DNA of 64,000 bases, taken from positions 372,001 to 436,000 of the forward strand of contig NC_047081.1 of assembly GCF_902459465.1 (NCBI RefSeq). Reading direction: 5' to 3'. The notes under the pieces were generated by a model that saw only the letters and a program-made list of their open reading frames with translations, did not search any database and was not told the origin of the DNA. The DNA comes from Asterias rubens. Taxonomy: Eukaryota. The translations under genes were made by a program, and so were the position numbers. Of this stretch, positions 16,704 through 37,863 are shown one piece after another (the first letter of the stretch is position 1; the number at the start of each line of letters is the position of its first letter).

Positions 16704-17579
16704 ATGGGGTTACAGAAAGTATTAAACACCTTTATCCACCTGTATTCATTTGGCATTATGGTCGGGTATCTACTAATGGTGCTGTTATCTCCGCTTTATC
16801 AAAAGATCTCTAAACCCATGTCCCTGAGACCGGTAAGTAAACGATGCACAAGGTGAAATAAAGCCATGTCATCTCCCCAATAACCCTGACATTTTTTATT
16901 TTTTATTATTAAGGAAAAAGTGCATCGGTAACTTGCGTACATAGTGAATATGTACAACAAAATCAAGAACTAAATTGAACGTAACGATTGTATTTTGCTG
17001 TAGATTCTGGTGGTGTATAACTATGCATGTAGTCTACTCAGCGTCTGTACCTTCGCCATGTTCGCTTACGGTATGTACGACGCCGGGTCGGTATTTCGCA
17101 TGGAATCTACACTGGTACTCAAGCAAGCCTTCCTACTCTACCGCATAGCCAAATACATTGAGCTTCTAGACACCGTCTTTATGATTCTACGCCATAAACG
17201 ACGGCAGATTTCATTTCTTCACGTGTATCACCACGGCAGTATGATAAACCTCGCGGAGTTCTCATACCTCTTAACGCCATGGGCGGCCGTTGCTTTCTCC
17301 CTTGGTCTTAACTCGCTCATACACGTTTGTCTTTACTTCTACTATGGACGGTGCGCAGCAAATCCAGATAGCCCGCCCTCATGGAAGAAACAAATGACCC
17401 AGCTACAGATTGCGCAATTCTTCGTCATACTGGTGCACTGCACGGTTGGTTACCTGTATCATGGTTTCTGCGGCTATTCTATATTCTTTTGTATGACAAT
17501 GATTTATCTTTTTGGTAGTTTTTACGTCGTTGCATTTCTCAGGTCTAAACAGCCAAAGGATCAAATAAAATCAGAATGA
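16704..17579 (+). CDS. GNS1/SUR4 (ELO) fatty-acid elongase, HVYHH type, 234 aa; exons 16704-16832 and 17004-17579
   Basis: Motifs KYIELLDT, QISFLHVYHH, NSLIHVCLYFYY and TQLQIAQF. Phase-0 intron CCG|gtaagt...ttgctgtag|ATT. An in-frame TAA upstream of ATG 16704 fixes the start. Confidence 0.93.
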
Positions 17580-20500
17580 TGCAAAATGTCCACAAAATGT
17601 ATGTTATTATTTTTTAAAGTCTTTTCTAAGTTTTTTTTTTCCAGAACAATGAAGTTGGATGGACAGTAATGTAAGGTACATTAAAACAACATTTAGAATT
17701 AGGTTGTAGGACTTCAGCAACATTTTGAGGAGGTGCCAGATGGTGTTGTTCAGAATGTAAAGGAGTTGAATATTGGCTGAAAATTTAAAACTGTACGCTA
17801 TAACGATGCTTGCTCAAACAAGTCTAGAATTAAACTGCAATTCTTTGTATTTTCATTACATTCCACTGTAAAATGTTTTCTCAAGACCACATGACTTGTG
17901 ATAAGTTTTAGTACTATTAATCATGAGAATAGCAGTGTGTGATTTTTTAATTATTTTTGTTTATATTTAAGAAACAACCAAAAGGTTCCACGTCGTTTAT
18001 CTCCAGCTGTCTAACCGTTAGTTTTGCACACCACTTGGTAGTTTCCTATACATTATGTTAATCCTAACGTCACGTGTTTTGTTTACACAATCTTAGCCAC
18101 AGAGCTCAGTGTTCATGCACGCACTTTTAGTTCACAGTTTAACGGAAGAAAATGTCAAATCTTGTGAAAATTTACATCATCTTTTTTATTTGCCATAGAG
18201 GGTATCATTGTTCAGCTGTTTTTTTATTATTTTTTTATGTTGGAGTTTTTTATGTGAATCACAAATCAACTTGTCTGTCAGAATAAATATTTGGCAAGTT
18301 CTGGATCACACTTTGTTTGTTTTGTAAACGAATTGACAGTAATACTTTTGCGTCTTTCGTATTTTGTGAACAGTATAAAATTTAAGGGGTATTTCTTGAC
18401 CTCATTCCCAGGTGTTTGCTCCGAATATGCCTTACCATATAATAGTAACATGAGGCGGGATCGATATGGTTCTTTGCCTATGGGATCAAGGCTTACACTT
18501 CCTTCATTTATCCAATTTACAAAGAAACAACCATGGAAAATGAGTTTGTTTAAATATTTCAATCTGGAATAAAATTTGAATTTTTCTACCACAATTGTGT
18601 GTTTTTGGTTATATTTGACCCTAAAATATGCGAAATGAGTACATAACCCCATGATAATATCTTTGCATAGTTGAGTAATTTTCATCAACGACTCTTTTTC
18701 CTCTAAGATTATTGATGTCCATTTCATGGTCTGTATACGTTTGGTAATAACTCTGATATCTACGGCAATAAAAACGTGTGTATTTCTAAAACGTTTATTA
18801 TTCATGTGTGGACATAAGCTCCGGATTTTCGGCTATTTTATAAATATCGCGACCACCACCTTTTGAAAATGTTCACGGTTTAACTGTAGACAACTACATT
18901 TATATAGGATTATATACAACAATCAAACGGTTCCTTAACCATTCTTTTAAGTTATTTTATTAATTGCATACTTCTTCTGCAAATTAGGATATGCACGGCA
19001 CGCGTTGAACACGTGCTGTCATGCGAGTTTTAAAATTGCGTTCACTTCAAATACGCTTAACAGTCAAAACCCGGTATCCATCCAGTGTCAAAGTCTTCGT
19101 TTCGAAAAGGACTAAAGATCGGTGATAAAAACCCGGCTCATAAACAGCGCCCTCTTTGAGGTCAAATGAAGTCTTGTCATTGGCTGAGAGTATTTTTGGC
19201 GCGTACACACTAAATACCCACCAGAAGTCTGTATTATGAGCAGACGGTTTCTGCTTACGGGGTAGACATTAATAGCAGAAGTTCTATTTCGTAAAGGCTG
19301 CTAACCGTAAGCAAAGAAAAAGTTAAGCTTGCCAGCCGTTTGTGCTCAACAATGCAAATGTGCTAAGCCACAATCCTTGGACCTGAGTAGCCACACATTT
19401 GTTGTTCGTGTCCATCAGGAACAACCAGTTTAAAAACCACTGATGCAGTTATCTTAATTTTATTTATCAGTTTACAATCGCTGTGTCAATGGTGAATGAA
19501 GTGTTTGAGTTTGTCGAATACAAGACCTGCAAAGCAGTTACTTAATATTTATGTTGTTCATTTGGTGTCTTTGTTAGATGGCAACTCATGGAGTGGGCGA
19601 GCTTGCTGGGGGCGACTTTTTGGTTGGGGCGAGATGAAAGTGTACCCCGGTGATTGTGGCTGTGCACAAATCCATTGCGCTGTTCATTGATTTAAACAGA
19701 GTTAATAAACTTATTTAATCTTTATAATCTGAAACTAAATCAAAGTATTTTTTGTTGTCTGTAATCCTATTACCTTGTCTGCCAGGGGCGGGGCTCTGTA
19801 ATTACCCCCGACCCAATTCCCGCGACCACCCCACAACCCCATGTCGCAAGGCCGTGCGTGACAAAGATCAAAGGTAGACTTGTATTAGTCATTTCCCATT
19901 GTCTTCGATAACGGATTCTCTTGATTTTCAATTAGGGCAGGTACTGAGTACGAAGATCCAAAGTTGTGTGTTTTGAAGAATTTAAAGGGATTGTGTCTTA
20001 GATAAAAGATAATTTGATTACCATTTAGGGCATGCATTGTGTATTTGAAAGAATTGATATGACTTGCGTAATAACATTATCACTGATACAAAATATATGT
20101 GATATACTAGTTTGTCGTTGAAGGGGTACGCCCAATGGGTTACGCCCAATGTTTTTACCAGGGGCGTTTCCTGTTGGGCGGGGTTGTGTGAGGGGTATTA
20201 CTAGACTATTTAGATATGGGTTGCACTTAAGTTGGATCGAAAATTGCGCACAGAGCAACCAAATGCACAAACACCGGTCCCTCTTTACAAATCTCTCCTG
20301 AGCACATCTCTGTTTGTCCCCCGCTCGCTTGTACCCCGGCATGTACCCTCTCTCTCACAAACGCTTTCGAATAACCCCTCGTTATCTAAAACGCACCTCG
20401 ACTTCCCTGTAGGGGTTTTCCGGGCCTAAATTCTTTCTCACCTTCAAATAAATTAGTGAGCAATTAACTAAACGTTACTTCAGAGGAAGCCGTTTCTCAC

Positions 20501-22224
20501 AATGTGTTATGCCACCAACAGCGTCTCCGTTCCTTGTTATAACCAAATAAGTTGTTTTATGCTAACATGTATTTTTTAGTAATTACCAAACGTGTCCAGT
20601 GCTTTTGAGGTACTTGGACAAGTCTACCTTAATTGCGACCTTTGCCTTTGCAACAATGCTTTGGGGTATCGCTGAATCAATACCCAAATCAGCTGAAGGA
20701 CTACCCCATTGACAAACACACTTTTGATAATAATGATTGGGATTTGCAGCTTCCATTATTTTATAAATCATTAATGAATGATAAAGGTGTTTCCTTGCTA
20801 AGGTTGAGCATTGAGGTACCTCCATGGGTTGAGCAACAGTTACGTCAACATGCCCCCCCCCCCCCGGCAACCAAAGATTGCATTGTATTGCTGGGGTCAT
20901 CGGGTGAAGTTATGGCCCCAGTACATACCCATTTATGGTAGCTTCAGGGATGGATATATCAAACATTTATCTGAATTTAAAAATATTGTCACGTCCGCCT
21001 GGTAAATTAAATTCTCAAACATGACACCTTTTGTTTGGGTAAAAGTTGTTAATTTATTTATTTATTTATTTAAAAGTAGAATTTACTCCAGTCCAGTGCA
21101 GTTTCTATCATGTGATCTAAAACTAGATCTAATGTGGTCTAAACCTAGCAAAACATAAATAATGTCACTTTAGGCAACAACACCTTCAAATATTTGTGTA
21201 TTGATAGTCATGTTGTAAACAGCATAACAATTTTTACCAAAATATTAATTTTTATTGATAATCAGCCAAGAAAATACTTAGAGGTACAAAACAATTTCTA
21301 TACAATAATCTTTTATTTTAAATCGAACAAAACAGTTATGATGCATAATGATGCATAATGATGTGGTACACATTCGCAAGTTTCAGTCAATGTGATTGGC
21401 TTATACATCGACTATTTTGTTCTGATTTTCGTGACCAATCTATTGATTATTCTAATGTATCGATTGTTCTTGACATGAACAACTTTATTGACAAGTACGA
21501 AACAACGTATAAACAATACCGAGGTCAGAACGAACGTTTAAGCTCGAGGAAAATTCTACTAGGAATACTAAAAATATAATTTACTCTTTACATTTCTGTC
21601 AATTCTCATACACCTATTCATGCATCTATCGATTTATACAAATTACCTGAAAAATACAATCATTTTTAGTCAAAGAAAGAAAATGTCGGTATCCCAATCT
21701 ACCACTTAAAATCAAAGGTTTAATTCAAAAAGTGCTCGATTTGTACCATAGTTCACCACTGATCAAAACGACTGAAAGAAATGCTATGTATGCATCTCAT
21801 TAGAGGCATAGCCTACATATTTTATACTACAGATATATATATTTATAGGAAGAAAAACATCTATTGCATAATAATTGTGTCACACTTGTAAACAATTTTA
21901 ACAATACCAAAAACTGATATCAATATTGAAAACAATAACACCTACTATTAATTACTGTAGTCGGTCAAGCCCCACTGCACACACTGTGCCGCTTCGCTGA
22001 ACAGACCATAGTACAGGGTTCCCGCCGTTTATAGCTATTCCTTGAATTTAACAATATAATCTAAGATGTTCATGGATTTTTGTTTTGGTGGAAGGTCAAG
22101 AAGTTGGCATAAGCCTCTTTGAGACATGGTTGACACTATAGTAGATGTATTTTGGGTTTGGGTGTTTGAAGTGTGGACCTTAGAACAAAAACCACATAAT
22201 GTAGTGACTTAAACACTGTGTGTG

Positions 22225-22440: not shown

Positions 22441-23802
22441 TCAAAGAGCTGTGGAGGCCTATACACGTAACAGACTAAATAAAACCCGGCACACCTCAAA
22501 ATGGCCGACTAATACTGCTATCCAATAATTTGGAACATTGAAAAGCATGTTCCTGTTTGACATGTTTTGGCCTTAGTGGTTTTCCTGTATGGGTTCCAGG
22601 AGGTGCCTTATAGGACTTCAACTTGTACTTGTTGCTAGTTCACTTATTTTACACACCAGATCTTTACATACACAAAACAGAACATTGTTAACTGAAGTTT
22701 AATCTCTACAACCAATGTTTGCGATGTATTTGTGGCGCTGACCGGTTGCTACAAATTCTAAAACAACGATAGATTTCTGTACAAAACAGCATAAGAATTT
22801 GTAATGGAAAACACCCTGATTTTGTCCTTGTGGAAAACATGGAATTTCACTGTAATAATAATCTGGGAACCCTGATACGAAAACAGGCCTATTCGCAAAA
22901 AAAAAATCATCACATTTTGATAAAATGTTATTTTAATTATTTTTAAACAGTATTGTGTTTACTAAGTAATTGCACATATAAATTTGGATTGAAATAAACT
23001 CGTGATTCTGACTAAGGGGCTTATCGGGGGCGAACGACTTGTACAAGTTAAGCCGGAAGGAAAAGCAAATTTATAGAGACCGAGGTCAAATTGAAAAATA
23101 TTACTCGTGCATTATCTTTCAATGTCATAAATGCTATAATTCATTCAACCAAACCGCCAACAAAACATAGTCTGGTGCTTGTTCTTGTTAGGAGTTTGAC
23201 CAATCGCATCTTGGACCAAAAGGGGCTCCAGACAAGGATAGGAGACTGCGCAGAACTCGCGCAATTTCGCCCTGTTCAAAGTGCGCATCAATCCTTTTGT
23301 ATGAGTTGGGATCCAAGGTCCCTGGTAATCATTAAAATGCGCGAGACTGGATATGCACAGTCGTCTGGCACCTACGGGTACACAGGTTACAAAATTGAAC
23401 GAGAACTGGTCGTGTTAAATAATATATCTTACTGTAGATAAACCAAACATAAAATTTGTGACAATTAATTCAAACTGCAAAAGTGGTATGTAAGAATGTA
23501 CCCAGTCTGTACCCATTCTGACACCAGAAGGTTACAACTATAAATCAATAGTATTTCAGCCTTGATTGTCTGATGATGGTGGTACAAAAATGAATGGAAT
23601 CCTTTGTGAAATTACATTCATCTCTGTCAGAACGCCACCAACATAAAGGAGAAATAAAATTAATGGACCAATATAAATTTAAAAACCAATATAAAATTTA
23701 AAATTTGTCAACTGCAAACCAACAATAAGATTGCATGATGTAAATTACAAATTCATAATCATGATGTAGAAAGTTTGTTGTCAAAAGTTGTTGGACAACT
23801 TT

Positions 23803-24717
23803 TTAGTTCGTCTTCTTTTCTCCATTGTTGAGTTGACCTCTCGGCTGTTGCATGTCCGACTTGTCAGCAAGTTTCTCCTGTTGCTTAGCGAAGTAAGCCC
23901 TGTAGAAATAGTTCGCGAAGAGCATGAAATAGCTAAGATACATGACGAAGGATACCTCTAGATTTCTCCAGGTGACATCGCATGGCTCACCGCTCTTTAG
24001 GACCTGATGAGCGTATAGATTGATGATAATCCCCATAAACATTTGCATGATTTGCAAAATGGTTATACACACGTTGACTTTACGAGGAATCCTGACCAAT
24101 CGGGATGCTTTAAGGGCATAGTAGGTATACATGAAAGCATGGACGGTGTAGTTCATAACCAGAAAACAGCGCCCAGTCGAGGTGTAGCAGCCATAACTAT
24201 ACCAGGTGTACAATAGTACAGTGATATGATGATACCAATGAAGGAAGATCAACTTCTGCTTTCGTAGTACGATGAACGCAGTATCGCCCAACTCGACCAG
24301 TTTGCTCGCAGCGAAGAGCCAGGCCCACAGACCGCTGGCCCCGATGAAGCCGACCGAGTCACACGCTATAGATTTAGGGCCGTAGGTAGTAGCCATGTAG
24401 TAGCTTTCTTCCCAACCACGGAGCAGTCCGATCCAGCTGAAGATGGCCAGGCCGACCGACCACGCCGTCAGGGCCTGGCGGAGATCGTAAGCCGGCCGGT
24501 CCCTCATGATTCTCTGCCCCACAAGTATGAGTAGAACATAGAGACTGCATAGGGGAATACCCACTGACCAGTACTGCTGGAAAAGGCCCACACCCCACTC
24601 ATGATCGAATCTCCGTTCAAACGCGAACTCATAGGCGTACACCACGGGTACTTTCGTCGTGTTCAACGGCACTTGCAGAGGAAGAGTAACCGGTGGAAAT
24701 CCCCGTGTCTCGGACAT
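23803..24717 (-). CDS. ELOVL6: ELOVL3/6-like elongase, copy 1, intronless CDS, 304 aa
   Basis: SKLVELGDTAFIVLRKQKLIFLHWYHH, MNYTVHAFMYTYY, TILQIMQM, and C-terminal KKTN dilysine ER-retrieval motif. Confidence 0.96.
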   Translation of the reverse strand: MSETRGFPPVTLPLQVPLNTTKVPVVYAYEFAFERRFDHEWGVGLFQQYWSVGIPLCSLYVLLILVGQRIMRDRPAYDLRQALTAWSVGLAIFSWIGLLRGWEESYYMATTYGPKSIACDSVGFIGASGLWAWLFAASKLVELGDTAFIVLRKQKLIFLHWYHHITVLLYTWYSYGCYTSTGRCFLVMNYTVHAFMYTYYALKASRLVRIPRKVNVCITILQIMQMFMGIIINLYAHQVLKSGEPCDVTWRNLEVSFVMYLSYFMLFANYFYRAYFAKQQEKLADKSDMQQPRGQLNNGEKKTN

Positions 24718-24941
24718 TTTCTCTGCCGGTGAAATTCAGATGCCTTCAGATGTATTGACCTATCTTCATATGAACAGGGCGATAGTTCAACCCTTTACAT
24801 AGACCTTGCTATGTGACCACTAGTATAGTAAACTAGCCTTGTATGTACGTCCTCGCCTTGTATCTATGCGTCAAGCCGAAGGTATGTACTCATACATCAT
24901 GCCAAACTAGTTAGCATACGCGGCTCATTAGGGATTATAAT

Positions 24942-25037
24942 TTATACAGTTGTCCCTCATCGGGCAGGCATGAACAGCGAGCGTGTCCCTTGCGCAGTCC
25001 ATTACGCACATATACCTCGCCTTAAAAATCACGCCAT
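24942..25037 (-). promoter_or_regulatory. Candidate promoter of ELOVL6 copy 1: TATA-like TATAAA at about 24942-24947 and SRE-like ATCACGCCAT at 25028-25037
   Basis: Motif matches 225-320 bp upstream of the ATG. The SRE matches the RTCACSCCAY SREBP consensus. Short motifs only, with no functional data. Confidence 0.3.
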
Positions 25038-25767
25038 CTGTTTTTTAACCGTAGAAATAAACCCAGTCAATAGACTTGTCTCATGCCTTTTATTAACTAT
25101 TTTGTAAGGTTCAGTCATGCACAAACTGTTCCATGCGGGTCCTTGAAGCCTTGGAACAGACTTTAGGTCAAAACACTATACAAAATGATTGGCTCCAATA
25201 GGCCTTTTACGCCGGGGTCGAACATAGGTGTCGTTGTGAATTTTTGACATGTGTGTTTTTAATTTCCTACAACTTTTATGTGGAAACGTGACCGTTTAAC
25301 TCTCCCGTTTCCCCTCGCACATTTTTCAACACGCACATAAAATAAATTCACAGTTATAATTCATAATATTATGACTTATATCTCAAATCAGCATATCTAT
25401 TTTATATTTAATAAATTAGCACAAATCATTACTAAGTATAGCTGCGCTGCTCATAGTTAGGAATTACCATAAATCATAACTTATAAAGCATATCTCGTAA
25501 TCATACACAAGCCTATAATTGTGAATATTTCATAAATATGAATTATCACCACTCATAACTATAGCTCGATTTGAATTAGCATAAAACATCAAAATATTGA
25601 CTTTGTATCTCGGTCATGAGTTAGCATAAATTTATCTATGACTTATTTTTCATACGAATTAGCATAAGTCATACTTATTCTGCCAATAAAGTTGTCACTA
25701 TGACAAACTTGTTACGGATTCATCATACGAATAATAAAAACGGTCGTGATTTTGTTTAATTAATGAG

Positions 25768-25891
25768 ATGGGATTCGAACCGGGTCTACAGATTAGAAAG
25801 GCAGGGAAAGAAACATGCTAAGTCAAAGAAACATGCTAAGTCAAAGAAACATGCTAAGTCAAAGAAACATGCTAAGTCAACCTGATCCCCA
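25768..25891 (-). mobile_element. tRNA-derived SINE head with an internal 18-bp unit repeated four times (25807-25878)
   Basis: B box ggttcgaatccc and 5' end ggggatcaggtt on the minus strand. Same family as 59385-59468 and 63175-63330. Confidence 0.7.
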
Positions 25892-25959
25892 AATACCGTG
25901 TAAAACTCTCTAGTTTATGGGAACCCGTTAGTGCACTAATACTCCCATGGTAAGAACAA

Positions 25960-26049
25960 ATTATTACCGTCACGTTGAACTACTACACACATTATTACCG
26001 TCACGTTGAACTACTACACACATTATTACCGTCACGTTGAACTACTACA
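25960..26049. repeat. 31-bp tandem repeat, about 2.9 copies (attattaccgtcacgttgaactactacacac)
   Basis: Direct inspection. Confidence 0.92.
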
Positions 26050-28090
26050 AGCACAACAGAACCAGCCCCCCCCCCCATAACAAATACCAGGAAAGGCCCC
26101 GAATCATACGATACAATAAGTAAAGGACAAATAAATAGAAAGGATACGCTTGAAAACCATGTTGTCCTTGGCATATTAAATTGTTTGTTTCGATTTTAGT
26201 GTAAAGTAGTGGCGACACGCATTATACCATCAGACACACACTGAAAGTTAGTATGGAGCCATACTAAAGATAGCTCCACGGTATTTAGGGCATCATAGTT
26301 TATTGCTACATGAAAAGGGCAGGACTGTCTAGCGTAACTGCACACAAATAAACCCTCACAAAAATTCATTTTATGATAATGCAAACTGTGTGCATTGTCG
26401 AACAAGGTTGCTTGCAATCAAGCGTGCAGGGCAATATCACGAACATGCCTGGGGATTTGTTTTTGGAATAACCTGGGTCGGGGCGGGGTGCACATCCACA
26501 GATCGGCGGTTCAGTATTTCGTCCAAAGTTCTAAACACATTTTTTAAGAAACTTGACACATAATATGTTTCACCAAGTTCTACATGATGACGTAATTTTT
26601 AAATTATTTGTGTGTGAAATATGGTATTTCCCCCATAGTTTACGTTTTGTTCTTCTTCGAATGCCTAAATTTACACTTATTTTGACATTATTTGAAAACG
26701 TGGCAAAAATGTATTTCTGTGGTCGTGACCAATAGGGGCAAAGTAGTTTGCGCTCGTGTTTTGCAGAATGCACATGTCCTTCTCAACTTGTTACGAATCA
26801 AGTGTCTTGCTCAAGGGACCGTAGGTGGGCCATAATCGTTAGTATTTTTGTGTTGTATTCACTTGAAACTGATTTTGCCTCCATGAACGGTTGCCTTGGT
26901 AACAGCTGACCCCATGTAACAATCACTGAATGACCCTAGATATATTTTGGAGAAAACAGAAAGTTTTGAGGTGTTCGGATGCAGAATGCAACCAACGCTA
27001 AACATTCAAACTACTCAATCAACACATTTGATTTAACATAGCAAATTTATGATATTATGTTTATAATATATTGTTATCTATAAAAGGTGAGAGTGTAGTC
27101 TTAGTTGACGAGAGCTGTTCATTTTGAACTATTTCATTTTGTATTTATATTATATTTTCGTGGAAAGGACTTACACAAGTTTAGTTATCCTGGTGTATCA
27201 GTCCGCAACAAAAGGTGCCTAAAGAGGGCGCTATATGATTAACTCGGTAGCAATTTTGGTCCCCAGATAATTATCATTCATCGACATTTGAACTTTAATC
27301 TTCTGCTCAATTAGATATGGGAGTCCCTGTGCCCGTCGCGTTGTTCTATCAGATTAAAACCCTACACCGGTGGAATTTTCTAAACGTCCGAGCACAAGCC
27401 TTAAAGAAATGTCCCTCTCTCTGCAAATGGGACCATTTGTTTCAGGGCCTATAGTTATCCCATATACATCAAGTTCCAAGGTCACAATTAGGCAAACTTG
27501 TTTACACTTTTTCCCCATTGGTGGGCTCTCAGGTCTATCTATATATTTTGTGTGTCCACAGAATATAAATGAGGCCTCCACCCTTTTTCTCCCTTTACTT
27601 TGGTTTGGGTGCATCTAGCTCTCTATGTGTACGAGTGCATCACCCTTAAAGCGCATGATTATGTCACTACCTTTGGGTGTGCCAATTAAAGGTATGTTGG
27701 GGTGGGGTGCCGGGAAAGGGGTGGGGGTGGAATGGTAGATGTATGTTTGTTTGTAATGGAGGAGTCCCATAATAATTATCAGTACTTTTTGATGATAACT
27801 CTATTAGACGTCACAATAAACACCGATACAAAAAACCCATCTGGGTTTTACTTTGTATATTTCACAAAAGATTCAAATAATATTACAAATACACAAACAA
27901 ACTGTATAATATTAAGTATTTAAAATTATTTCTTGATTATTTTTTTATACCAATTATTAATTTACAACATTTTAACAAGAGAAAATGAACCTATTGTGCA
28001 TGATACTTAGTTAGTTACATCAAAAGAGTCACACAAAAAACATTGTACAAAATTCGAAGAAACTAAAGTCTATAGTTTGTTTTTAAGACT

Positions 28091-28273
28091 ATAGTCTTTA
28101 TGCAATGACGTCATATCGCCGCCATCTTAGAAGCAAAACGATCATGCAACTCTGGGGAAAACGCACAGCTATAAACGGATGTCTGAAAGGGTGATGGGCC
28201 AATGAGCAACATTCTTGTGCCCTCTAGCTGAGGGCGCCCTACCCAAATGACGCCATAGAACAATAATGGTCTT
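28091..28273. mobile_element. Short MITE, family C, with tagacc/tcttat-type ends
   Basis: Shares gacgtca, ccatctt and ctctag(c/g)tgagggcgccctac blocks with 45208-45386. Confidence 0.6.
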
Positions 28274-28905
28274 ATAAAATTAATTCTCTCGTTTTAAGTT
28301 ATTTTTAGAAAATAGAACTGCTTTACCAACCAAAAGAGAGCTATAAATGCAAACAAGTAAAATGGTCTGACATTTCGATTAGTGTGAGCCTTTTCCAAAC
28401 CTAGATATAGGAATAAGGGGCTCCGTCCGGAGCAGTGTACATTTTTAGTGCACGTTCAACAACAAACGGAGCCTGGAGCGTAATTGAGGTTTGGAAAAGG
28501 CCCTCCTAGGGTTTCCGTATCAAGGATTATGTTCGTGAAGGTCACACTAATCAGTTTGCGTTTGTGTTTCGTCTCAAATACATTATTTATAAATGTATCC
28601 ATGATTAAGCAAGAATTACCCCTATAAACCAACACCAATGAACATTGGACTCTTAAAACCAGGACCCGATTTCAATAGTTGCGCAATAACCAGTGAATAT
28701 TGCTTAACCATTTTTTGCTATTATGGAAAAATATGCAGAATACTACAGATTGTAAATGTGACATGCGTATTTTGGCTGATAACTTATTCTGGCAATCATG
28801 ATGACAAGAATTATTCGAATATATGAATTTGAGACAAGCACAGTATCAGTTATAACATGGCCACACATCAACACCTCTTTCAGAGCCCCAACAAAATGAG
28901 AGATA

Positions 28906-29295
28906 TTAAAGCAACACGTTGCCTTGGATCGGTCGAGTTGGTCTTTGAAAAGCGTTCTGTTAACGTTTGTTATAAAATGCATATGGTTAGAAAGATGTTG
29001 TAAAAGTAGAATACAATGATCTACACAAATATGCCTCAAAATTGCGTGGTTTTCTTTTTACCTCGTCCGCTAACACGGTCGGCCATTTATGGGAGTCAAA
29101 ATTTTGACTCCCATAAATGGCCGACCGTGATAGTTCGCGACGTAAAAGGAAAACCGTGAAATTTCGAGTGATACTTGTGTGGATCATTATATTCTACTTT
29201 TAAAACATCTTTCTAACCATATGCATTTCATAACAAACAATTTTGAACGCTTTTTATAGACCAATTCGTCCGATCCAATGCAACGTGTGCTTTAA
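28906..29295. mobile_element. ~390-bp foldback element with TTAA ends and a central 56-bp perfect palindrome (29074-29129)
   Basis: Ends ttaaagcaacacgttgccttggatcgg and ccgatccaatgcaacgtgtgctttaa. The arms are complementary along their length. Centre cacggtcggccatttatgggagtcaaaa|ttttgactcccataaatggccgaccgtg. Confidence 0.9.
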
Positions 29296-29464
29296 GAGCC
29301 TTTTACAAAAGAGAAATGTACAATTGTAACCCAAATCAGTTTACATAGCAATAGTTACTTTGCATTATAATTTCCCTCAACCTCGGCTGGATGAAAGCAT
29401 TTGGCTTATACTAGTTAACTGGAATATTTTAATTTAAATATGGAAGTTCCTTCGTCGTATATTT

Positions 29465-30334
29465 CTACAGTCCTTTCTTTTCTTGCAAACTGCTCCCGTT
29501 TTTATTGAGATCTTTTCTCTTCCCATCACTGCCCGGCTTGGAGAGGTATCTACCAATGAAGAAATTGAGAAAGAGCACCAAGTAGCTGAAGTACATCACT
29601 GAAGATACTGTCATGTTCTGTTCGTTGGTTGAACAGTAGCCGCCATTTCGAATTTTCCAGTACGCGTAACCGTTGACAACGCATCCCACCAGCATCTGTG
29701 TGATCTGTAACGTGGTTATCACTAAGCCAACCCAGTTAGGGATGCGTAGTAGACGAGAGGCCTTGATAGCATAGTAGGAGTACATGAGGGAATGAACAGT
29801 GAAGTTCATGAGGCAGAACGAGCCAGCTAGAGCGACAGTCTGAGGATAGGAGTACCATGAGTACATGAGCACAGTGATGTGGTGGTACCAGTGAAGGAAG
29901 ATGAGATTCTGCTTACGTAGCACGATGAATGCCGTATCGATGAGCTCAGGGAGTTTGCTGAGAGTGAAGATCCATAGCCAGAACCCAGCCATACCCTTGA
30001 AGAGGACTGGGTTGCAGATAGTTGCATCCAAGCCGTGGGTCCGGAGTATACTAAAGGTACCGGTAGCGAATCGAATCATACCCATCCAGCTAAACGCAGC
30101 GAGTGCAGCAGACCATACAGCAAGGGGTAGACGCAGATCAAACGGCTGTCTAGACTGCATCAAACGCCTGCCGCCGAAGACTAGAACAACATACAACACG
30201 CTGAATACAATAGACAGTTGCCAGTTGTTGTAAAACCATATCAGGTTGGGTCCAGGTTGGAATTGTCTCTCAAACTCGAACATAAAAGCTGGTTCGAAAG
30301 GTTTGAGGGTAGAATTTACTCGCAAGTGCTCCAT
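29465..30334 (-). CDS. ELOVL6: ELOVL3/6-like elongase, copy 2, intronless CDS, 289 aa
   Basis: SKLPELIDTAFIVLRKQNLIFLHWYHH, MNFTVHSLMYSYY, TTLQITQM, and C-terminal KKGL. Confidence 0.96.
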   Translation of the reverse strand: MEHLRVNSTLKPFEPAFMFEFERQFQPGPNLIWFYNNWQLSIVFSVLYVVLVFGGRRLMQSRQPFDLRLPLAVWSAALAAFSWMGMIRFATGTFSILRTHGLDATICNPVLFKGMAGFWLWIFTLSKLPELIDTAFIVLRKQNLIFLHWYHHITVLMYSWYSYPQTVALAGSFCLMNFTVHSLMYSYYAIKASRLLRIPNWVGLVITTLQITQMLVGCVVNGYAYWKIRNGGYCSTNEQNMTVSSVMYFSYLVLFLNFFIGRYLSKPGSDGKRKDLNKNGSSLQEKKGL

Positions 30335-33300
30335 GGTACAATCCGGCTAGTTGTTGAATCGTTGATGAAAAATAAAAACCACAGGTTTTTTCAACAGTTC
30401 AAGTTCAGGAAATTTAGGTGTATTCTTTCAGGAAGAGCAAGCTCTCGTCGTACTGTCATCATTTAATATGATGAAAGCACATGATACAACCACCACACTG
30501 TACCATGCACATACTTTTCCAATACGGTGGCAAGGGCCACATCACACAGTCATACTGTAGTCGAACCATCGACTGTTACCCCCTATGGTCTGAATATCAA
30601 AGTCAACCTCTATCACACCGATCAGTACACATATTTCACATAGCCGTCAGTGGATAACAAGGGAGGACGTTTGGTTAATAGAACAGCCCTTGATTTACAT
30701 AGATGTTCGCAATTGGCGCTTAAGCGGTCAGGCGGGGATTATCGACGCTGATTGGTCAATACAGCTACGCCTTCATTGCAATGATGAATGAATCCTTTTC
30801 ACAAGCAGACACAAAAATCCTATTGGCACATAAAGACTTATCGCCCCATATGGTGACACGCGATCAGGCCACCAAGCGAGGCAGCCTGTGATCACACAGT
30901 CCATGAATGCAATAAAAGCTATTTTATTAAAGGCATTGGACACGCTTGGTTGCCAAATACCCGTATTTTCACTGGGTGTCTCCGGTCCTTGATGGCCCAC
31001 ATCATGCATACAATTAATAGTCTGTGAACAATTCTGGTTCGTCAAATTTCTATGACCCTGAATGAAAAGCAACTCGAATTCAAACACTTCAACTCGTTCA
31101 AATCTCTAATTGCGAGGACACAATGGAAGTTATCCATGGCATTGTGTCATATAGTAAATATTACACTGCCAGTAGACATCACCTTGTTTCACAGACAGAC
31201 GTCACAAGCAAATAGAACCACCAAAGTTCAATATACATTACTCAATAATTGCGAAATTCTTTGACAGACTGTGGGAGTAAAAGTCACAGATTTAAAGATT
31301 TAAAGATTGTTAGCGTTGAGTATTGTATACAAAAGGCTGTGGTTGAATACATTACGTTCCATTGTTACTTTTGGACCATTAGTTAACTAGAATGCCCCAT
31401 TTCATAATACAAGCTGGTAACGAACAGACAAATATTGCTTAACAAAATCTTCATGCCAGCCAAACTGTCATTAAGTTTGGAAAGGGGACTAAGTGGTAGC
31501 TGGGATAAGGCTTGAATAAGCGCACACGATCGTATCGTTCAATGCACAATGTGTTATCAGGCGTAGTAAATGGATTAAAGAGGATTAAATAATAATGATT
31601 AGTTCTGCACGCATGGTTTACTTAAATGTCTTAATATAGCAATACTGGAAGTAATCTGTTTGCCAACTTAAGTTTATCTTTTTATAAACTTTATATCAGT
31701 GATATATAAACTTAGCTGTATTCCGTTTAATTAAGTTGCATGGACAGTTTTTGTGTTATAGCCGAATTTTGTTTTCTCCTAAGAACTTTTTTATCTGAAC
31801 GAATTTCGATAGGAGCTATTTCAGGACCAAAACTATAGAAAATGTTTTGCATAATATGCAACGAATGCATATGCAAATAAGTTTATTAATAACTTTTTAT
31901 CTGAACGAATTTTGATAGGTGCTATTTCAGAAAACAAAAACATAGAAAATGTTTGCGTATGCAAATGCACATGCATCACACACTATTATATAGGGACCTT
32001 TATTATAATATGGATCGAAAGTTTGTTGAACCCTGCAGGGTGGTATACATGTTCACTACATTTGGTGCTCGGTTTGTGGTATTATTGTATTCTGGTCTTT
32101 TATTGTGCTCTGGGAATGTCATGAATTATTGAGAGGATCCGTTTAATGGAGGGGGGGGATAGGGGTGGTAATTTCATACAAGAGGAAAATTAATTTGTTA
32201 AAGGGTCTTGTACTTTTTCCTAACACAAAACACAATGTCCACAGATTTGCATTGAACTTACACAGTTTGAAGATAATGATAGTAGAAAGCTTCCCTAGAA
32301 ATGTTACTTTACTGAGGTGCTGTAGTTTTTGAGAAATGAGTAAAAGTAATAATTTTCGTCTCGTTTTAGCTTGTAAAATCGTATTAACCAGTTATACTAT
32401 GTTTATGGTAAAACAAATACCCTAACTGGTTAATGGGATTTTACATTCTAAAATAATTTTCGTCTCACTTGAGACGAAAATTATTTTGAGACTTGTTTTA
32501 CCAATTTCTCAAAAACTACAGAACCTCAGTTAGTAATATTTGGAGGAAAGCCTTTCACTATCATTATCTTCAAACCCTGTAAGTTTAATAGGTGACAACT
32601 GTTATTTTATGTAATTATGGTCTCACCATGGAGGCAAAGTTTTTTCTTCTAGGTCCCCAAACTGCAGACACTGGCCTTGATATTGATAGCCACCAAAATG
32701 GCCGTAGGCTTTAACGAGCAAGGGATATATTAATTTCAATTTTGTTTTCATTTCCCAATAAATAAAGTCCTTATGTGGAGTGAGGGGGAAAATACACGTC
32801 TCTGACCTCACTTTAAAACGGTGTAATTTGCACCGCGTTCAATACCCTTGCGGTGCAAAATGTGTCAACATCCAAAAAATCAATTCCTGGAAAAATTGGG
32901 TCTTAAAGTAAAAGGAACAGCATATTGAGATTCGATATGTTTTGTTCTAAATGTTTTAATGAGAATACAATTCCACCCCAGCTTGGCAGCATTAGTATAC
33001 TGTATGCCCAATAATTATCAATTTCATATCTCACAATTCCAACATGGGGTCGAGAGAATCTTGGACACAATCCGAAGAGTAAATATGAAACTTAATCCCG
33101 GTTATATCTCGAAAAATTATCTACAATTCTAAGAGATCAACAAACTTCGAACCAGCAGCCTTCAGGTGACATTTTTTGACATTAATACAAAGACAACACT
33201 GAAAGAACAGGAGAATTTACACAATGATTTGTGTGCAATTTTTTTTTTATATAGAAAATGGGTGAATAGTACTGATCAGAACATAGTTAAATTAGGAAAA

Positions 33301-34207: not shown

Positions 34208-34460
34208 AAAGGAAAGATTTCGGCCTGAAATCGAGGAAATAGCAATTTAGTACATCGTGCTTTATTTATATTGTAGCAATCAAAATAAAGCCAAGATGAA
34301 CGTTCACATAAGTCGTGAAAAAAACCGAAAAATAAAGGAAAGATTTCGGCCTGAAATCAAGGAAATAGCAATTTAGTACATCGTGCTTTATTTATTTTGT
34401 AGCAATCAAAATAAAGCCCAGATGAACGTGCACAAAAGTCGTGAAAAAAAAACCCCGGAA
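34208..34460. repeat. 126-bp tandem duplication, two near-identical copies
   Basis: aaaggaaagatttcggcctgaaatc begins at 34208 and at 34334. Confidence 0.92.
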
Positions 34461-36537
34461 AATGTATGATCCATTTTACGAAAATTTCCATCAAATTTTA
34501 TGACAGTTTTGCAAAAGTTACTTCTTCTTTATAACAACTGGTACTTTCCCTAATAATTAACACATTGTTTTAACCCGCTGTCCCATATTAAAAGAAACAC
34601 AATAACATATTCATAATTTGTGACTACAAATTAAATTGATGAATATAATTAACATCGATAAACATTGTATTCCCTTCGCCACAGAAATTTTCAGTGTTCA
34701 GCTGCAATTATAATATATATATTCTAATATCCTGTTGCAATAATGAAGGATTCACATAGAATGGTGCCAATACTATTGGCCCATTATTCACAATTCTTAA
34801 TCACTGCAGACTTTCCTTCATGACCCCATAAGAAAAAAACATATTATAATGTTGCTGGCATAGAACGGGCATTACAACAAATGTTAAGCCATTGTCGAAA
34901 CAAGTGGATGTGACAGGTTAAAGCTTATAAGTTGTCCTTAGCAACATCCTTAGCAACAGCCTAAGTCACAGCCGCCAATTCAAAAGTGGCATTAAAAGAC
35001 AAAATGCTGTGAGGTAAATACATGGCAATGATTACCAGGGAAGCAGTCTCATGCATTGGGTGGCATTTTAGCTGGTAAACCGCCAAATAAATCATCTATA
35101 TATATAATAATTGTATAAAGCAAGAGTCGTGTGTGCTCATTTTATCAGCTCCAGATCATTTGTGGATTTTTTTTTAAATAAACATTATTATTTTTAAATA
35201 ATATTCATTTGAACAAAAATATCAGCAATTTCTTAAGGTAAACAAAGTAAAGATCGTTTCCTGAAGACCATTTTGATGAAACGTCGATTTACAAGAGACT
35301 ATAATACAGTGCAACAATATCATTCAATCAATTTGCAAATACATACAATAAGCTTCAAATATTGTTTTTTTTTATGAAGTGCCAATGTAAAGAAACGTTT
35401 CATCCTTTTATGAACATTGTATACATTATTACCTCGTGCAACCATTCACCATAAAAATACACATTATTTAAAAGCACAGCGTACTACGTTTTCCCCCTTA
35501 CAGAACGTAATGACGTCATTCGAAATAAAGCCTACCCTATACAATCTACGTTCAAAAACCACATTGTCTAAAGCCAAGTTGAATTCACAACCCATAGCGC
35601 ACAAGTATGCCACTGGTAGTGATAAAATTGCATTCTGTGGAGCGAAGCTCCGAGTCCTGATTTTCTTTTTTTTAACAATAACTTGTTATTTACTAGCTTT
35701 TGTTACGCTGTTTCAAATTTGATGGGTTGGAACATTTTAATGGTCGGATTTTGGTCAAAAATTAGTCCAAAAATATTCTGCAAGATGCAAAAAAAAAACT
35801 ACAATATTTTGTGGTAGTGCACAACAGGCAACAAAATCACACACATTGCTTGTTAATTTTGTTTTTTTTAAATACTACATTTATGTAATTTGTTTTGATG
35901 CCAACAACAATCTCACAACTTGTTCAGAGGAATGTATTAATTTTGTGTACATGAAGTATTATTGTACAGTTACGTAATTATCATATTTAATCACAAATCG
36001 AGGTTTTCCCTCTAAACACATTTTTTTTTGTCTTAGGCACCTTGTTAAAATACATCCCTTTTAACAAATTATTTCTGCAACATGTTTACAATGCAAGGAA
36101 ATATAAAGCTCCTTTTAATGTGATTGAAAAACTACACTACACTACACTATCAGTTGATGAACATTACACTAATGTCGCATTAAATATCTTGCATACTATG
36201 AAATAAACTGCGCCAATAAAGTATCTAAACACTTACAAATGGTCAGATATATCGGAACCTGAAATAGTATGCCAAAAAATAATTATTCATTTCGAGTCAC
36301 CGTTAATTTCTGCACATTTTGACACATCTTGTGTTGCGCTACGATGTTGTTTGGTGGATTTACGGGCACTTGAGTGGCTTAAGGTCGAATTTCAAAAGCC
36401 CCTATTCAAGCTAAATCGTTGTATTGTGACGGGTAAGATCAGCGTTTCTTTTGCCCGCCTTTTATAAATGATTTTTTGTTTTGGTCGCGTATTGGATAAA
36501 TCGTTTGCGATGAACATCAGCAATAGTTGTCAGTAAT

Positions 36538-36685
36538 CTCGGTGGTCTAGTTGGTAAGACACTGCTCTAGAATGGAAAAGGTCGTGGGTTTGAATCCCAC
36601 CCGAGTAATATGCCTGTGATTTTTTTCACAGAGCTTTGTTTACAGTGCTAACACACATCGGTGTATATGGGTTAAACCAATCAGT
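36538..36685 (+). mobile_element. tRNA-derived SINE
   Basis: A box tggtctagttgg, B box ggtttgaatccc and tail taatatgcctgtgatttttt. Related pieces at about 10490-10610 (-), 42413-42560, 44560-44620, 49815-49900 and 61335-61370 (-). Confidence 0.75.
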
Positions 36686-36939
36686 TGAACTTTATATTGT
36701 GTTACCATTCTACTAAATTCTCTCCACTGATTGGACTCTTGTCTTGTGAAATAGTTTTCATTCTTTTTAAATATAAATATATATATACATACTTGCCACT
36801 CACCTTTTTGTGAAGTTTCAATAATATTTATGTGTTGATGACTTCATTAAGACAATGAAAGGTTGGACTTCCTGTTTTATAATAAATTGGACTTAAAGTG
36901 GAATTATGTCAAGTTTGACAATTTATACTGTGTTCATTA

Positions 36940-37863
36940 TTAAAGAGTTTTCTTTGTTTTATCCATAACGTTCTCATTGGTGTCATGACAGGCTTTCTTG
37001 ATCTGTGCCTCTTGAGCCAATCTTCTCTTTGTCATGTAGGTTTCGTAGAAGAAATGGACGAACAAAGTGAAGTAACTTAGGTACATCAAGAAGGATGCTC
37101 GGAGGTTCTCGTCTGTGGTGGAGCAGAATCCACCACTGCTTCTTACGGAGTAAGCGTAGCAATTGATGGCACATCCCACGAACATCTGAGTGATCTGCAA
37201 GGAGGTGAGCACGATGTTGATCCAGCTAGGGATGCTGACCAGCTTGGAGGCCTTGAGGGCGTAGTAAGTGTACATCAGGGCGTGAACGGAGAAGTTCATC
37301 AGGACGAAGTAGCGAGATGGGGCAACAATCAGGGGGTAAGTGTACCAACAGTAGATGAGGACAGTTATGTGATGATACCAATGGAGGAAAATCAGTTTCT
37401 GTTTGCGTAGCACGATGAAGATGGTGTCGCCCAGCTCCGGAACCTTGCTTAAGACAAATAGCCACGACCAGAAGCCGGCCACGCCTTTATAGAAGATGGG
37501 GTCGCAAGCAGATGCCTTCCATCCGTAGGTACTTACGAAGACGATAGTATCAGCCCATACTCGAATGGCTCCCATCCAGCTAAACACCGCCAGGCTAAAC
37601 GACCACATCGCCAGGCCCAATCGCAGATCAAACCGGGGCCGTTTCTCCATGTACAACCGCCCAGCGAAGATAAGGGCTGCATATAGAGCACTGTACACTA
37701 TCGACTTGGACCAGTTATTCTGGAACCACCATATCTTCTCAGCTGGTTCAAAGTGCTTCTCAAACTCGAAGGGGGCGTGTGGGTCGCATGGTGTTCGGTT
37801 AGTACTTAGTAGCACCTCATAGTTCTCAAAGAAAAGAGCATCTTCCCTTGCAATTGTCGTCAT
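36940..37863 (-). CDS. ELOVL6: ELOVL3/6-like elongase, copy 3, intronless CDS, 307 aa from ATG 37863
   Basis: SKVPELGDTIFIVLRKQKLIFLHWYHH, MNFSVHALMYTYY, TSLQITQM, and C-terminal KKTL. The ORF track starts at a GTG; the first ATG is at 37863. Confidence 0.96.
   Translation of the reverse strand: MTTIAREDALFFENYEVLLSTNRTPCDPHAPFEFEKHFEPAEKIWWFQNNWSKSIVYSALYAALIFAGRLYMEKRPRFDLRLGLAMWSFSLAVFSWMGAIRVWADTIVFVSTYGWKASACDPIFYKGVAGFWSWLFVLSKVPELGDTIFIVLRKQKLIFLHWYHHITVLIYCWYTYPLIVAPSRYFVLMNFSVHALMYTYYALKASKLVSIPSWINIVLTSLQITQMFVGCAINCYAYSVRSSGGFCSTTDENLRASFLMYLSYFTLFVHFFYETYMTKRRLAQEAQIKKACHDTNENVMDKTKKTL

What the first reader, a model, noticed from the sequence alone, without database searches (positions are those of the whole stretch)
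16704..37863. Four-gene fatty-acid elongase cluster combining two deeply divergent ELO clades
Seen: in about 21 kb, one HVYHH-type elongase (+) converges on three tandem HWYHH ELOVL3/6-type genes (-), and I recognised no other gene between them. Established: these two motif types mark anciently separated branches (ELOVL3/6 versus ELOVL1/2/4/5/7), and vertebrate ELOVL genes are mostly dispersed. Inference: tandem duplication explains the triplet but not the adjacent gene from the other clade. It may be a relic of ancestral linkage, or a co-regulated cluster making unusual marine lipids such as non-methylene-interrupted, branched or very-long-chain acyl groups.
Basis: partly seen in the sequence, partly recalled or inferred. 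Interest (0 to 1): 0.7.

Follow-up and report, generated by a model that had tools for sequence, protein, structure and literature searches.

The report
Ancient linked fatty-acid elongase genes
A starfish chromosome carries four intact fatty-acid elongase genes of two very different types side by side, and this odd pairing is an old gene neighbourhood also kept in a sea lily, an acorn worm and a mussel, not a starfish invention.

Summary
Observation confirmed. In Asterias rubens (contig C21), a 234-aa HVYHH elongase gene (+; CDS 16704-16832 and 17004-17579) converges on three intronless HWYHH ELOVL6-type genes (-; 23803-24717, 29465-30334, 36940-37863). All four keep the four ELO motifs. RNA contigs from three studies confirm the splicing of the plus-strand gene.

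The triplet is old. Patiria has the same three genes in the same order, one-to-one orthologous, with dN/dS about 0.1.

The adjacent gene is not an ELOVL1/2/4/5/7 member. It belongs to a separate, well-supported "short ELO" clade (99/97) found from cnidarians to cartilaginous fishes, outside the canonical PUFA-ELOVL clade (95/92).

The linkage is ancestral:
- Antedon has short(+) and E6(-) 4 kb apart.
- Glandiceps has the same convergent pair 29 kb apart.
- Mytilus has them 20 kb apart.
- A thioredoxin-domain gene lies head-to-head with the ELOVL6-type gene in Asterias, Antedon and Mytilus.

No ELOVL6-type gene lies within 10 kb of the short gene in Diadema, Ptychodera, amphioxus, a chiton or Callorhinchus.

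The "relic of ancestral linkage" reading is supported. A co-regulated lipid cluster remains untested and is disfavoured. The echinoderm ELOVL6 expansion is already published. I found no report of the conserved pairing or of the clade's wide range.

The parts
15695..15792 (+). Non-coding first exon (5'UTR) of the short-ELO gene
   Evidence: RNA-type contigs in X1, X8 and X9 join about 15790/15792 to 16660/16662 across a GT..AG intron.
16662..16832 (+). Exon 2 of the short-ELO gene. The CDS starts at ATG 16704 and covers residues 1-43.
   Evidence: Sequence read directly, with an in-frame TAA at 16674 upstream. The splice joint 16832 to 17004 appears in three runs. The intron position is the same in Antedon and Glandiceps.
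17004..17579 (+). Exon 3 coding part of the short-ELO gene (residues 44-234). It carries KYIELLDT, HVYHH, HVCLYFYY and TQLQIAQ. The 3'UTR runs on to at least 18592.
   Evidence: Pfam ELO E 1.2e-34. 100% identical to P0001, annotated 'ELOVL5-like' in A. rubens. Motifs. AlphaFold model pLDDT 93 with seven TM helices, best PDB match ELOVL7 6y7f at TM 0.78.
23803..24717 (-). E6a: intronless ELOVL6-type elongase gene, 304 aa, HWYHH, C-terminal KKTN
   Evidence: Pfam ELO E 4e-65. Orthologue of the fourth Patiria copy at 100/100. Motifs.
29465..30334 (-). E6b: intronless ELOVL6-type elongase gene, 289 aa, HWYHH, C-terminal KKGL
   Evidence: Pfam ELO E 1e-70. Orthologue of Patiria P0122 at 100/100, and sister to the E6c group at 100/97.
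36940..37863 (-). E6c: intronless ELOVL6-type elongase gene, 307 aa from ATG 37863, HWYHH, C-terminal KKTL. It is the slowest-evolving copy and the one closest to the crinoid neighbour gene.
   Evidence: Pfam ELO E 8e-67. 64-65% identical to the Antedon neighbour P0126, against 48-51% for E6a and E6b. Groups with Patiria copy 1 and Acanthaster at 99/95.
39465..44026 (+). Thioredoxin-domain gene lying head-to-head with E6c. It is part of the conserved block. The exons seen by similarity are 41463-41591, 42061-42204 and 43865-44026. A first exon with a signal peptide at 39465 is inferred only.
   Evidence: tblastx to the thioredoxin-domain genes next to the ELOVL6-type gene in Antedon and Mytilus, summed E 5e-40 and 2e-26. 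Weak Pfam Thioredoxin hit. Atlas feature search gives thioredoxin clusters at 0.97.

Best explanation
This is a real locus of four ER fatty-acyl elongase (3-ketoacyl-CoA synthase, ELO family) genes, built in two steps.

Step 1, old: a member of a distinct "short ELO" clade and a single intronless ELOVL6-type gene already lay next to each other in the protostome-deuterostome ancestor. The ELOVL6-type gene was paired head-to-head with a thioredoxin-domain gene. The short gene was probably paired head-to-head with USO1.

Step 2, in the starfish lineage before Asterias and Patiria split: the ELOVL6-type gene was duplicated locally into three copies. All three have been kept under purifying selection since.

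The clade mixture is therefore inherited microsynteny, not a new assembly of genes.

Shown: the gene models, expression and splicing of the short gene, clade membership, orthology with Patiria, and the shared neighbourhood in four phylum- or class-level lineages.

Inferred: enzyme activity, from intact catalytic motifs and fold. By analogy, the ELOVL6-type copies probably elongate C16-C18 saturated and monounsaturated acyl-CoAs, and possibly C18 PUFA as sea-urchin Elovl6-like C does. The substrate of the short ELO is unknown.
For: Gene reality:
- Pfam ELO hits on all four genes, and all four motifs intact.
- Spliced RNA contigs from three studies.
- Short-ELO model at pLDDT 93 with seven TM helices, matching ELOVL7 6y7f at TM 0.78.

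Triplet age:
- Patiria L033 holds the three orthologues in the same order and on the same strand, plus one extra frameshifted copy.
- One-to-one orthology at 100/100, 100/100 and 99/95.
- dN/dS about 0.07-0.11, with dS saturated.

Ancestral linkage:
- Antedon L027: short(+) at 10001-10937, intronless E6(-) at 15156-15989, thioredoxin gene(+) at 18044-20558.
- Glandiceps OZ203286.1: E6(+) at 10107386-10108228 and short(-) at 10137075-10139461, convergent and 29 kb apart.
- Mytilus OZ263153.1: short(+) at 65733596-65736410, thioredoxin gene(-) at 65748767-65755910, E6(+) at 65756117-65756914.
- The thioredoxin gene is also present beside E6c in the window.
- Given the same chromosome, the chance of such proximity is 2.6e-4 in Antedon, 3e-3 in Glandiceps and 4e-4 in Mytilus, from the chromosome lengths in those calls.
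- The E6 neighbours fall into an ambulacrarian clade (96/92) and a protostome group (87/84), as expected for orthologues.

USO1:
- It lies head-to-head with the short gene in Glandiceps, Ptychodera, amphioxus and a chiton.
- In A. rubens, USO1 is still on contig C21, 9.9 Mb away.
Against: - The pair is not universal. No ELOVL6-type gene lies within 10 kb of the short gene in Diadema, Ptychodera, amphioxus, Liolophura or Callorhinchus. In Diadema the genes found sit on different contigs.
- Only 10-kb flanks could be fetched. About 9 kb of the Glandiceps interval was not seen.
- The position of E6a in the tree is unresolved, so a purely local origin of all three copies is not proven (AU p 0.106 only fails to reject it).
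- No enzyme assay exists for any of these four proteins.
Confidence: 0.8

Rival explanations
1. The four genes form a functionally coupled, co-regulated cluster. Selection keeps the two elongase types together because they act in one pathway, for example successive elongation steps towards C20 non-methylene-interrupted or very-long-chain acyl chains.
For: - The linkage has lasted since the protostome-deuterostome ancestor, which could reflect constraint.
- The same RNA-type runs that hold the spliced short-ELO transcript (X1, X2, X8-X11) also hold 43-81% of the sampled words of 23000-31000, which contains E6a and E6b.
- Sea-urchin Elovl6-like C does make C20 precursors of non-methylene-interrupted fatty acids (PMC11750391).
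Against: - Orientation and order differ. The E6/thioredoxin unit is inverted in Mytilus, with the thioredoxin gene lying between the two elongases.
- Spacing varies from 4 to 29 kb.
- No ELOVL6-type gene was found within 10 kb of the short gene in several lineages that keep the short gene.
- Each elongase is paired head-to-head with a non-lipid gene, USO1 or the thioredoxin-domain gene. This suggests separate promoters.
- No conserved non-coding sequence was found between Asterias and Patiria across the cluster.
- Contigs give no expression levels, so co-expression is not shown.
Confidence: 0.12
2. The pair is the direct relic of the primordial tandem duplication that created the S/MUFA-type (ELOVL3/6) and PUFA-type elongase lineages, and has been kept adjacent ever since.
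For: - The short clade branches outside all canonical PUFA-type ELOVLs, so it is an early lineage.
- It sits next to a representative of the other deep lineage in four animal groups.
Against: - The short clade in my tree also holds protist sequences (diplonemids, MMETSP transcripts).
- ELOVL3/6-type genes group with fungal and amoebozoan elongases in published trees (PMC6010785).
- The split therefore predates animals, and adjacency would have had to survive far longer than the evidence covers.
- No data are available outside Bilateria, because the Nematostella look-up failed.
Confidence: 0.08
3. The juxtaposition is a chance, lineage-specific event in starfish, or an assembly or annotation artefact with pseudogenes.
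For: Tandem arrays and local rearrangements are common. One Patiria copy and the Patiria E6a orthologue carry frameshifts in that assembly.
Against: - The same neighbourhood occurs in independent assemblies of Antedon, Glandiceps and Mytilus (four Mytilus assemblies for the E6/thioredoxin pair).
- The ORFs and motifs are intact.
- A spliced transcript is present.
- The genes are under purifying selection.
Confidence: 0.02

Closest known systems
Vertebrate ELOVL6 and the echinoderm Elovl6-like expansion (sea-urchin Elovl6-like A-H; Kabeya et al. 2025, PMC11750391; Liu et al. 2024, Russ J Genet, not readable here)
   Same: E6a, E6b and E6c have the HWYHH box, K at -5 from the box, KKxx tails and 43-53% identity to turtle ELOVL6. 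They group with ELOVL6-type proteins at 100/100. Multiple copies in echinoderms are already reported.
   Different: The starfish copies are intronless and sit in a conserved tandem array. Their substrates are untested. In the sea urchin, only one of eight paralogues was active in yeast, and it acted on C18 PUFA and MUFA rather than the vertebrate C16 substrates. I found no published statement on their chromosomal arrangement or on their neighbour from the other clade.
'Elovl-like' of Hemicentrotus pulcherrimus (PMC11750391) and 'Novel ElovlA' of sea anemones (Surm et al. 2018, PMC6010785)
   Same: Both are described as PUFA-type elongases that cluster with no vertebrate ELOVL. Novel ElovlA is placed as sister to all other PUFA-type subclades. 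My tree puts the short clade, which includes Nematostella, Acropora and Diadema members, in the same position.
   Different: The papers treat them as echinoderm-wide or actiniarian-specific. Here the clade runs from cnidarians through molluscs, annelids, arthropods, hemichordates and amphioxus to cartilaginous fishes. No bony vertebrate appears among the 140 hits.
Human ELOVL7 (PDB 6y7f), the only solved ELO structure
   Same: phmmer E 2e-22. The model superposes at TM 0.78 over 237 columns. It has seven TM helices and the His box.
   Different: The short ELO is about 45-50 residues shorter, with a shorter N-terminus, shorter loops and a shorter C-terminal tail. It is only 27-37% identical and lies outside the ELOVL1/7 clade.
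Vertebrate Elovl8 (PMC12025145)
   Same: It is a recently recognised extra ELOVL lineage of 263-270 aa that is absent from mammals.
   Different: Elovl8 genes have 7-8 exons and group with Elovl4. A frog 265-aa ELOVL4-like protein, probably Elovl8, and two multi-exon A. rubens genes fall inside the canonical clade, away from the short clade.

Membership tests
ELO / GNS1-SUR4 family (PF01151), 3-ketoacyl-CoA synthases | Significant match to the family profile over most of its length | tested here: met
   E 4e-65, 1e-70 and 8e-67 for the three minus-strand genes, covering profile positions 1-241. E 1e-34 for exon 3 of the plus-strand gene, covering positions 41-241.
ELO / GNS1-SUR4 family (PF01151), 3-ketoacyl-CoA synthases | Four conserved motifs: KxxExxDT, HxxHH, HxxMYxYY and TxxQxxQ | tested here: met
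   All four motifs are present in all four proteins. In the short ELO the third motif is HVCLYFYY, with L in place of M, a feature typical of its clade.
ELO / GNS1-SUR4 family (PF01151), 3-ketoacyl-CoA synthases | Seven-transmembrane-helix fold as in ELOVL7 | tested here: met
   Tested for the short ELO only. pLDDT 93, helices at 14-35, 42-70, 80-105, 114-132, 137-162, 171-196 and 201-223, and 6y7f match at TM 0.78 with prob 1.00.
ELO / GNS1-SUR4 family (PF01151), 3-ketoacyl-CoA synthases | Condensing (elongase) activity on acyl-CoA plus malonyl-CoA | not testable with these tools
   Needs heterologous expression and GC-MS.
ELOVL3/6 (S/MUFA-type) subfamily | Groups with ELOVL6 in a phylogeny and carries the HWYHH box without Q at -5 | tested here: met
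   E6a, E6b and E6c fall in the ELOVL6-type clade at 100/100. Their box reads QKLIFLHWYHH or QNLIFLHWYHH, so position -5 is K in E6a and E6c and N in E6b, not the Q of PUFA-type enzymes.
   That clade is supported at 95/92 and contains all five multi-exon A. rubens elongases. The window's HVYHH gene lies in a separate clade at 99/97. Only 30 representatives in 1.84 billion reach E 1e-30, and canonical ELOVLs score 1e-18 to 1e-25 at 33-40% identity.
   The short ELO reads RQISFLHVYHH. Q111 is invariant across 35 clade members. The criterion is as quoted in PMC11286186.
Conserved microsynteny block (short ELO, ELOVL6-type gene, thioredoxin-domain gene) | Orthologous genes adjacent in several distantly related genomes | tested here: met
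   Found in Asterias, Antedon, Glandiceps (the elongase pair only) and Mytilus. Absent within 10 kb in five other species.
Co-regulated metabolic gene cluster | Correlated expression and products acting in one pathway | not tested
   Only contig presence in the same runs was seen. No expression levels, tissues or enzymology are available.

The most novel reading that the evidence does not exclude
The short ELO is a ninth, pan-metazoan ELOVL lineage, retained from cnidarians to cartilaginous fishes and lost in bony vertebrates. Selection has kept it beside an ELOVL6-type gene for over half a billion years because the two enzymes work as a unit, either through shared regulation or as partners in one elongation route. 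In starfish, the tripled ELOVL6-type partner would then supply diversified C18-C20 chains for echinoderm-specific lipids.
Probability: 0.12. Interest if true: 0.7.

Novelty: new member of a known kind. Interest (0 to 1): 0.45.

Why it matters
Elongase repertoires are used to predict which marine animals can make long-chain and unusual fatty acids themselves. This locus contributes two points.

First, published ELOVL classifications (ELOVL1-8 plus 'novel' Elovl1/7-like) overlook a well-supported, widely conserved short clade. Its only assayed candidate member was nearly inactive on the PUFA substrates tested in yeast. Its real substrate is an open and now clearly posed question, also for sharks and chimaeras.

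Second, the pairing of this clade with an ELOVL6-type gene and a thioredoxin-domain gene is a bilaterian-age microsynteny marker. It can anchor orthology among the many echinoderm Elovl6-like paralogues, which published trees could not resolve. It also identifies E6c as the ancestral copy and E6a and E6b as starfish-lineage additions worth assaying for new specificities.

Tried and rejected
- **Retrogene origin of the intronless copies.** Rejected as a recent event. The ELOVL6-type neighbour is also intronless in Antedon, Glandiceps, Mytilus and Patiria.
- **A longer N-terminus hidden in an upstream exon of the short gene.** Rejected. The upstream exon is non-coding and an in-frame TAA precedes the ATG.
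- **Elovl8 identity for the short gene.** Rejected on exon structure and the tree.
- **Other genes between the four.** No Pfam hit on any intergenic ORF of 100 aa or more. Only a tRNA-Ser-like sequence was found.
- **Conserved non-coding elements between Asterias and Patiria or Antedon.** None at blastn word 11; only coding matches.
- **USO1 next to the short gene in the window.** Absent. USO1 lies 9.9 Mb away on the same contig.
- **A thioredoxin gene near the Glandiceps E6 gene.** Not found within 10 kb.
- **Liu et al. 2024 (Russ J Genet), which may list chromosomal positions of A. rubens Elovl genes.** Not held.
- **Supplement of PMC11750391.** Not held, so the identity of 'Elovl-like' with the short clade stays inferred.
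- **A true ELOVL3 reference.** The one protein labelled ELOVL3 (Pelodytes) groups with Xenopus ELOVL6, so ELOVL3 and ELOVL6 could not be told apart here.
- **dS.** Saturated or undefined in all comparisons, so the dN/dS values are rough.


Full report
**1. What is there**

The window is Asterias rubens contig C21:372001-436000 (top hits). The finding's coordinates hold four ELO-family genes.

Three uninterrupted minus-strand ORFs match Pfam ELO end to end, at E 4e-65, 1e-70 and 8e-67:
- E6a, 23803-24717, 304 aa.
- E6b, 29465-30334, 289 aa.
- E6c, 36940-37863, 307 aa from the first ATG.

The plus-strand gene has coding exons 16704-16832 and 17004-17579, separated by a 171-nt GT..AG intron. It encodes 234 aa and is identical to P0001, annotated 'ELOVL5-like'.

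RNA-type contigs from three runs of three studies carry exactly this splice. They also add a non-coding first exon (15695-15792, joined to 16662) and a 3'UTR to at least 18592, or 19644 in one run. An in-frame TAA at 16674 shows that the short protein is complete, not truncated by a missed exon.

All four proteins keep KxxExxDT, the histidine box, the HxxMYxYY-type motif and TxxQxxQ. The box is HVYHH in the short gene and HWYHH in the three others. The three ELOVL6-type proteins end in KKxx.

No intergenic ORF of 100 aa or more has a Pfam hit. The only other feature is a tRNA-Ser(AGA)-like sequence at 36536-36608.

**2. The genome's elongase set**

A six-frame PF01151 scan of the whole assembly finds eleven ELO genes:
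- Five intronless ELOVL6-type genes: the three here, one on C26 and one on C5.
- Five multi-exon genes: two on C6, two on C23 and one on C13.
- The short gene in this window.

**3. The triplet**

Patiria miniata locus L033 carries ELOVL6-type genes in the same order and on one strand:
- Copy 1, 72% identical to E6c.
- Copy 2, 61% identical to E6b.
- A frameshifted extra copy close to copy 2.
- Copy 4, 67-79% identical to E6a, also with a frameshift in that assembly.

In maximum-likelihood trees each Asterias gene pairs with its Patiria counterpart, at 100/100 for E6a, 100/100 for E6b and 99/95 for E6c together with Acanthaster. E6b and E6c are sister groups at 100/97.

The position of E6a is unresolved. 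Forcing the whole triplet into one clade costs 3.85 lnL units, with p-AU 0.106, so a purely local origin is neither shown nor rejected.

dN against Patiria is 0.14-0.24 with saturated dS, giving dN/dS of roughly 0.07-0.11.

The array therefore predates the split of these two starfish orders and is maintained by selection. E6c is the shortest-branched copy and the closest to non-starfish neighbours, at 64-65% identity to Antedon P0126.

**4. What the HVYHH gene is**

Its nearest relatives are proteins of about 229-247 aa at 50-58% identity. They come from echinoderms, hemichordates, amphioxus, molluscs, annelids, a nemertean, a brachiopod, a barnacle, corals and sea anemones, and many cartilaginous fishes (Callorhinchus, sharks, rays). 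No bony vertebrate appears among the 140 hits.

An exhaustive HMMER search of 1.84 billion representatives gives only 30 at E 1e-30 or better. Canonical ELOVLs follow at E 1e-18 to 1e-25 and 33-40% identity.

I named representatives through cluster look-ups: mammalian ELOVL5, amphioxus Elovl2/5, alligator ELOVL7, and a frog 265-aa 'ELOVL4-like' protein that is probably Elovl8.

A 60-sequence tree built with IQ-TREE under a PMSF mixture model resolves three groups:
- The ELOVL6-type clade, 100/100.
- A canonical PUFA-type clade, 95/92, holding all named ELOVL5, 2/5, 7 and 8-like references, insect and sponge sequences, and all five multi-exon A. rubens genes.
- The short clade, 99/97, holding the window's gene. 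This clade also includes a few protist sequences.

The gene is PUFA-type by the Q(-5)/HVYHH criterion, but it belongs to a third, separate lineage.

Structurally it is a complete elongase. The model has pLDDT 93 and seven TM helices, and its best PDB match is human ELOVL7 at TM 0.78.

The literature has probably glimpsed this clade twice:
- As 'Novel ElovlA', thought to be specific to sea anemones and sister to all PUFA-type subclades (PMC6010785).
- As the unplaced sea-urchin 'Elovl-like', which showed 0.2-1.1% conversion of PUFA substrates in yeast (PMC11750391).

**5. Is the linkage old?**

Yes.
- **Antedon mediterranea (crinoid).** Short(+) at 10001-10937 converges on an intronless 277-aa ELOVL6-type gene(-) at 15156-15989. 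A thioredoxin-domain gene(+) follows at 18044.
- **Glandiceps talaboti (enteropneust).** On the same chromosome record, an intronless ELOVL6-type gene(+) at 10107386-10108228 and the short gene(-) at 10137075-10139461 are convergent and 28.8 kb apart. No gene is called in the 20 kb of that interval that I could see.
- **Mytilus galloprovincialis.** Short(+) at 65733596-65736410, a thioredoxin-domain gene(-) at 65748767-65755910 and an intronless ELOVL6-type gene(+) at 65756117-65756914. The interval is fully covered.
- **Asterias.** The thioredoxin-domain gene is also in the window, head-to-head with E6c, with exons at 41463-41591, 42061-42204 and 43865-44026 (tblastx).

Given the same chromosome, the chance of such proximity is about 3e-4, 3e-3 and 4e-4 in the three other species.

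The ELOVL6-type neighbours fall into an ambulacrarian clade (96/92) and a protostome group (87/84), consistent with orthology.

A second conserved adjacency is USO1(-) head-to-head with short(+). It occurs in Glandiceps, Ptychodera, amphioxus and the chiton Liolophura. In A. rubens, USO1 is still on contig C21 but 9.9 Mb away.

The simplest ancestral arrangement is USO1(-)|short(+) followed tail-to-tail by E6(-)|thioredoxin gene(+). Later events were an inversion of the E6/thioredoxin unit in the mussel, loss of the USO1 adjacency in echinoderms, and separation of the two elongases beyond 10 kb in Diadema, Ptychodera, amphioxus, the chiton and Callorhinchus.

**6. How it most likely works**

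Each gene should encode an ER-membrane condensing enzyme of the elongation cycle. This is inferred from the motifs, the fold and the KKxx tails.

Substrates are not known. The vertebrate ELOVL6 analogy (C12-C16 saturated and monounsaturated substrates) is weak for echinoderms. In the sea urchin only one of eight Elovl6-like enzymes was active in yeast, and it elongated C18 MUFA and PUFA to C20, feeding synthesis of non-methylene-interrupted fatty acids.

The co-regulated cluster idea remains open. Several observations argue against it:
- Orientation, order and spacing vary between species.
- The pair has separated repeatedly in lineages that keep the short gene.
- Each elongase is paired with a non-lipid neighbour.
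- No conserved non-coding sequence was found between Asterias and Patiria.

The same RNA-type runs hold the short transcript and much of 23000-31000, but contigs cannot give expression levels.

**7. Novelty and verdict**

The ELOVL6 expansion in echinoderms is published. The genes themselves are annotated ELOVL-like proteins.

In the searchable literature I found no report of the following:
- The conserved starfish triplet.
- The bilaterian-age short-ELO/ELOVL6-type/thioredoxin block.
- The pan-metazoan range of the short clade, including cartilaginous fishes.

This is a solid, moderately interesting comparative-genomics result about ordinary enzymes. I classify it as a new member of a known kind, with interest 0.45.

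Noticed in passing
window 36536-36608 (+): A tRNA-Ser(AGA) sequence (Rfam 39.4 bits; ARAGORN) lies about 330 bp beyond the stop codon of E6c, inside the cluster. It could be a working tRNA gene or a tRNA-derived repeat.
   Followed up: partly
window 19425-19668: A short segment downstream of the short-ELO 3'UTR is matched only in fragments of about 20 bases by very deep RNA-type contigs (depth 350-770) that run on into unrelated sequence. This is probably a dispersed repeat or transposon fragment.
   Followed up: no
L033 13860-14719 and 19814-20706 (Patiria miniata): Patiria has a fourth, unannotated ELOVL6-type copy close to its E6b orthologue. Both this copy and the E6a orthologue contain a frameshift in that assembly. 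NCBI models the latter with an artificial intron, giving 268 aa. These are either pseudogenes or assembly errors.
   Followed up: partly
G000:C23:1707203-1711201 (-) and 1718880-1722699 (+); G000:C6:5604300-5607974 and 6675834-6678620: Two further elongase pairs exist in the A. rubens genome. One is a divergently oriented pair of multi-exon PUFA-type genes 8 kb apart on C23. The other is two nearly identical multi-exon copies about 1.07 Mb apart on C6, which group with a frog 265-aa Elovl8-like protein.
   Followed up: partly
L029, L040, L026, L028: USO1 (p115) lies head-to-head with the short-ELO gene in amphioxus, a chiton and two enteropneusts. This is a second bilaterian-age gene pair, possibly sharing a bidirectional promoter.
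   Followed up: partly
L039 (Callorhinchus milii) and hits P0028, P0036, P0039, P0042, P0043, P0053, P0061, P0072: Cartilaginous fishes keep a 238-aa member of the short-ELO clade, auto-annotated ELOVL5-like or ELOVL4-like. No bony-vertebrate member appeared among the hits. This may be an overlooked vertebrate ELOVL lineage lost in Osteichthyes.
   Followed up: partly
window 51427-52521 (-): An exon with a Pfam ASC (amiloride-sensitive sodium channel) match at E 4e-20 flanks the block.
   Followed up: no
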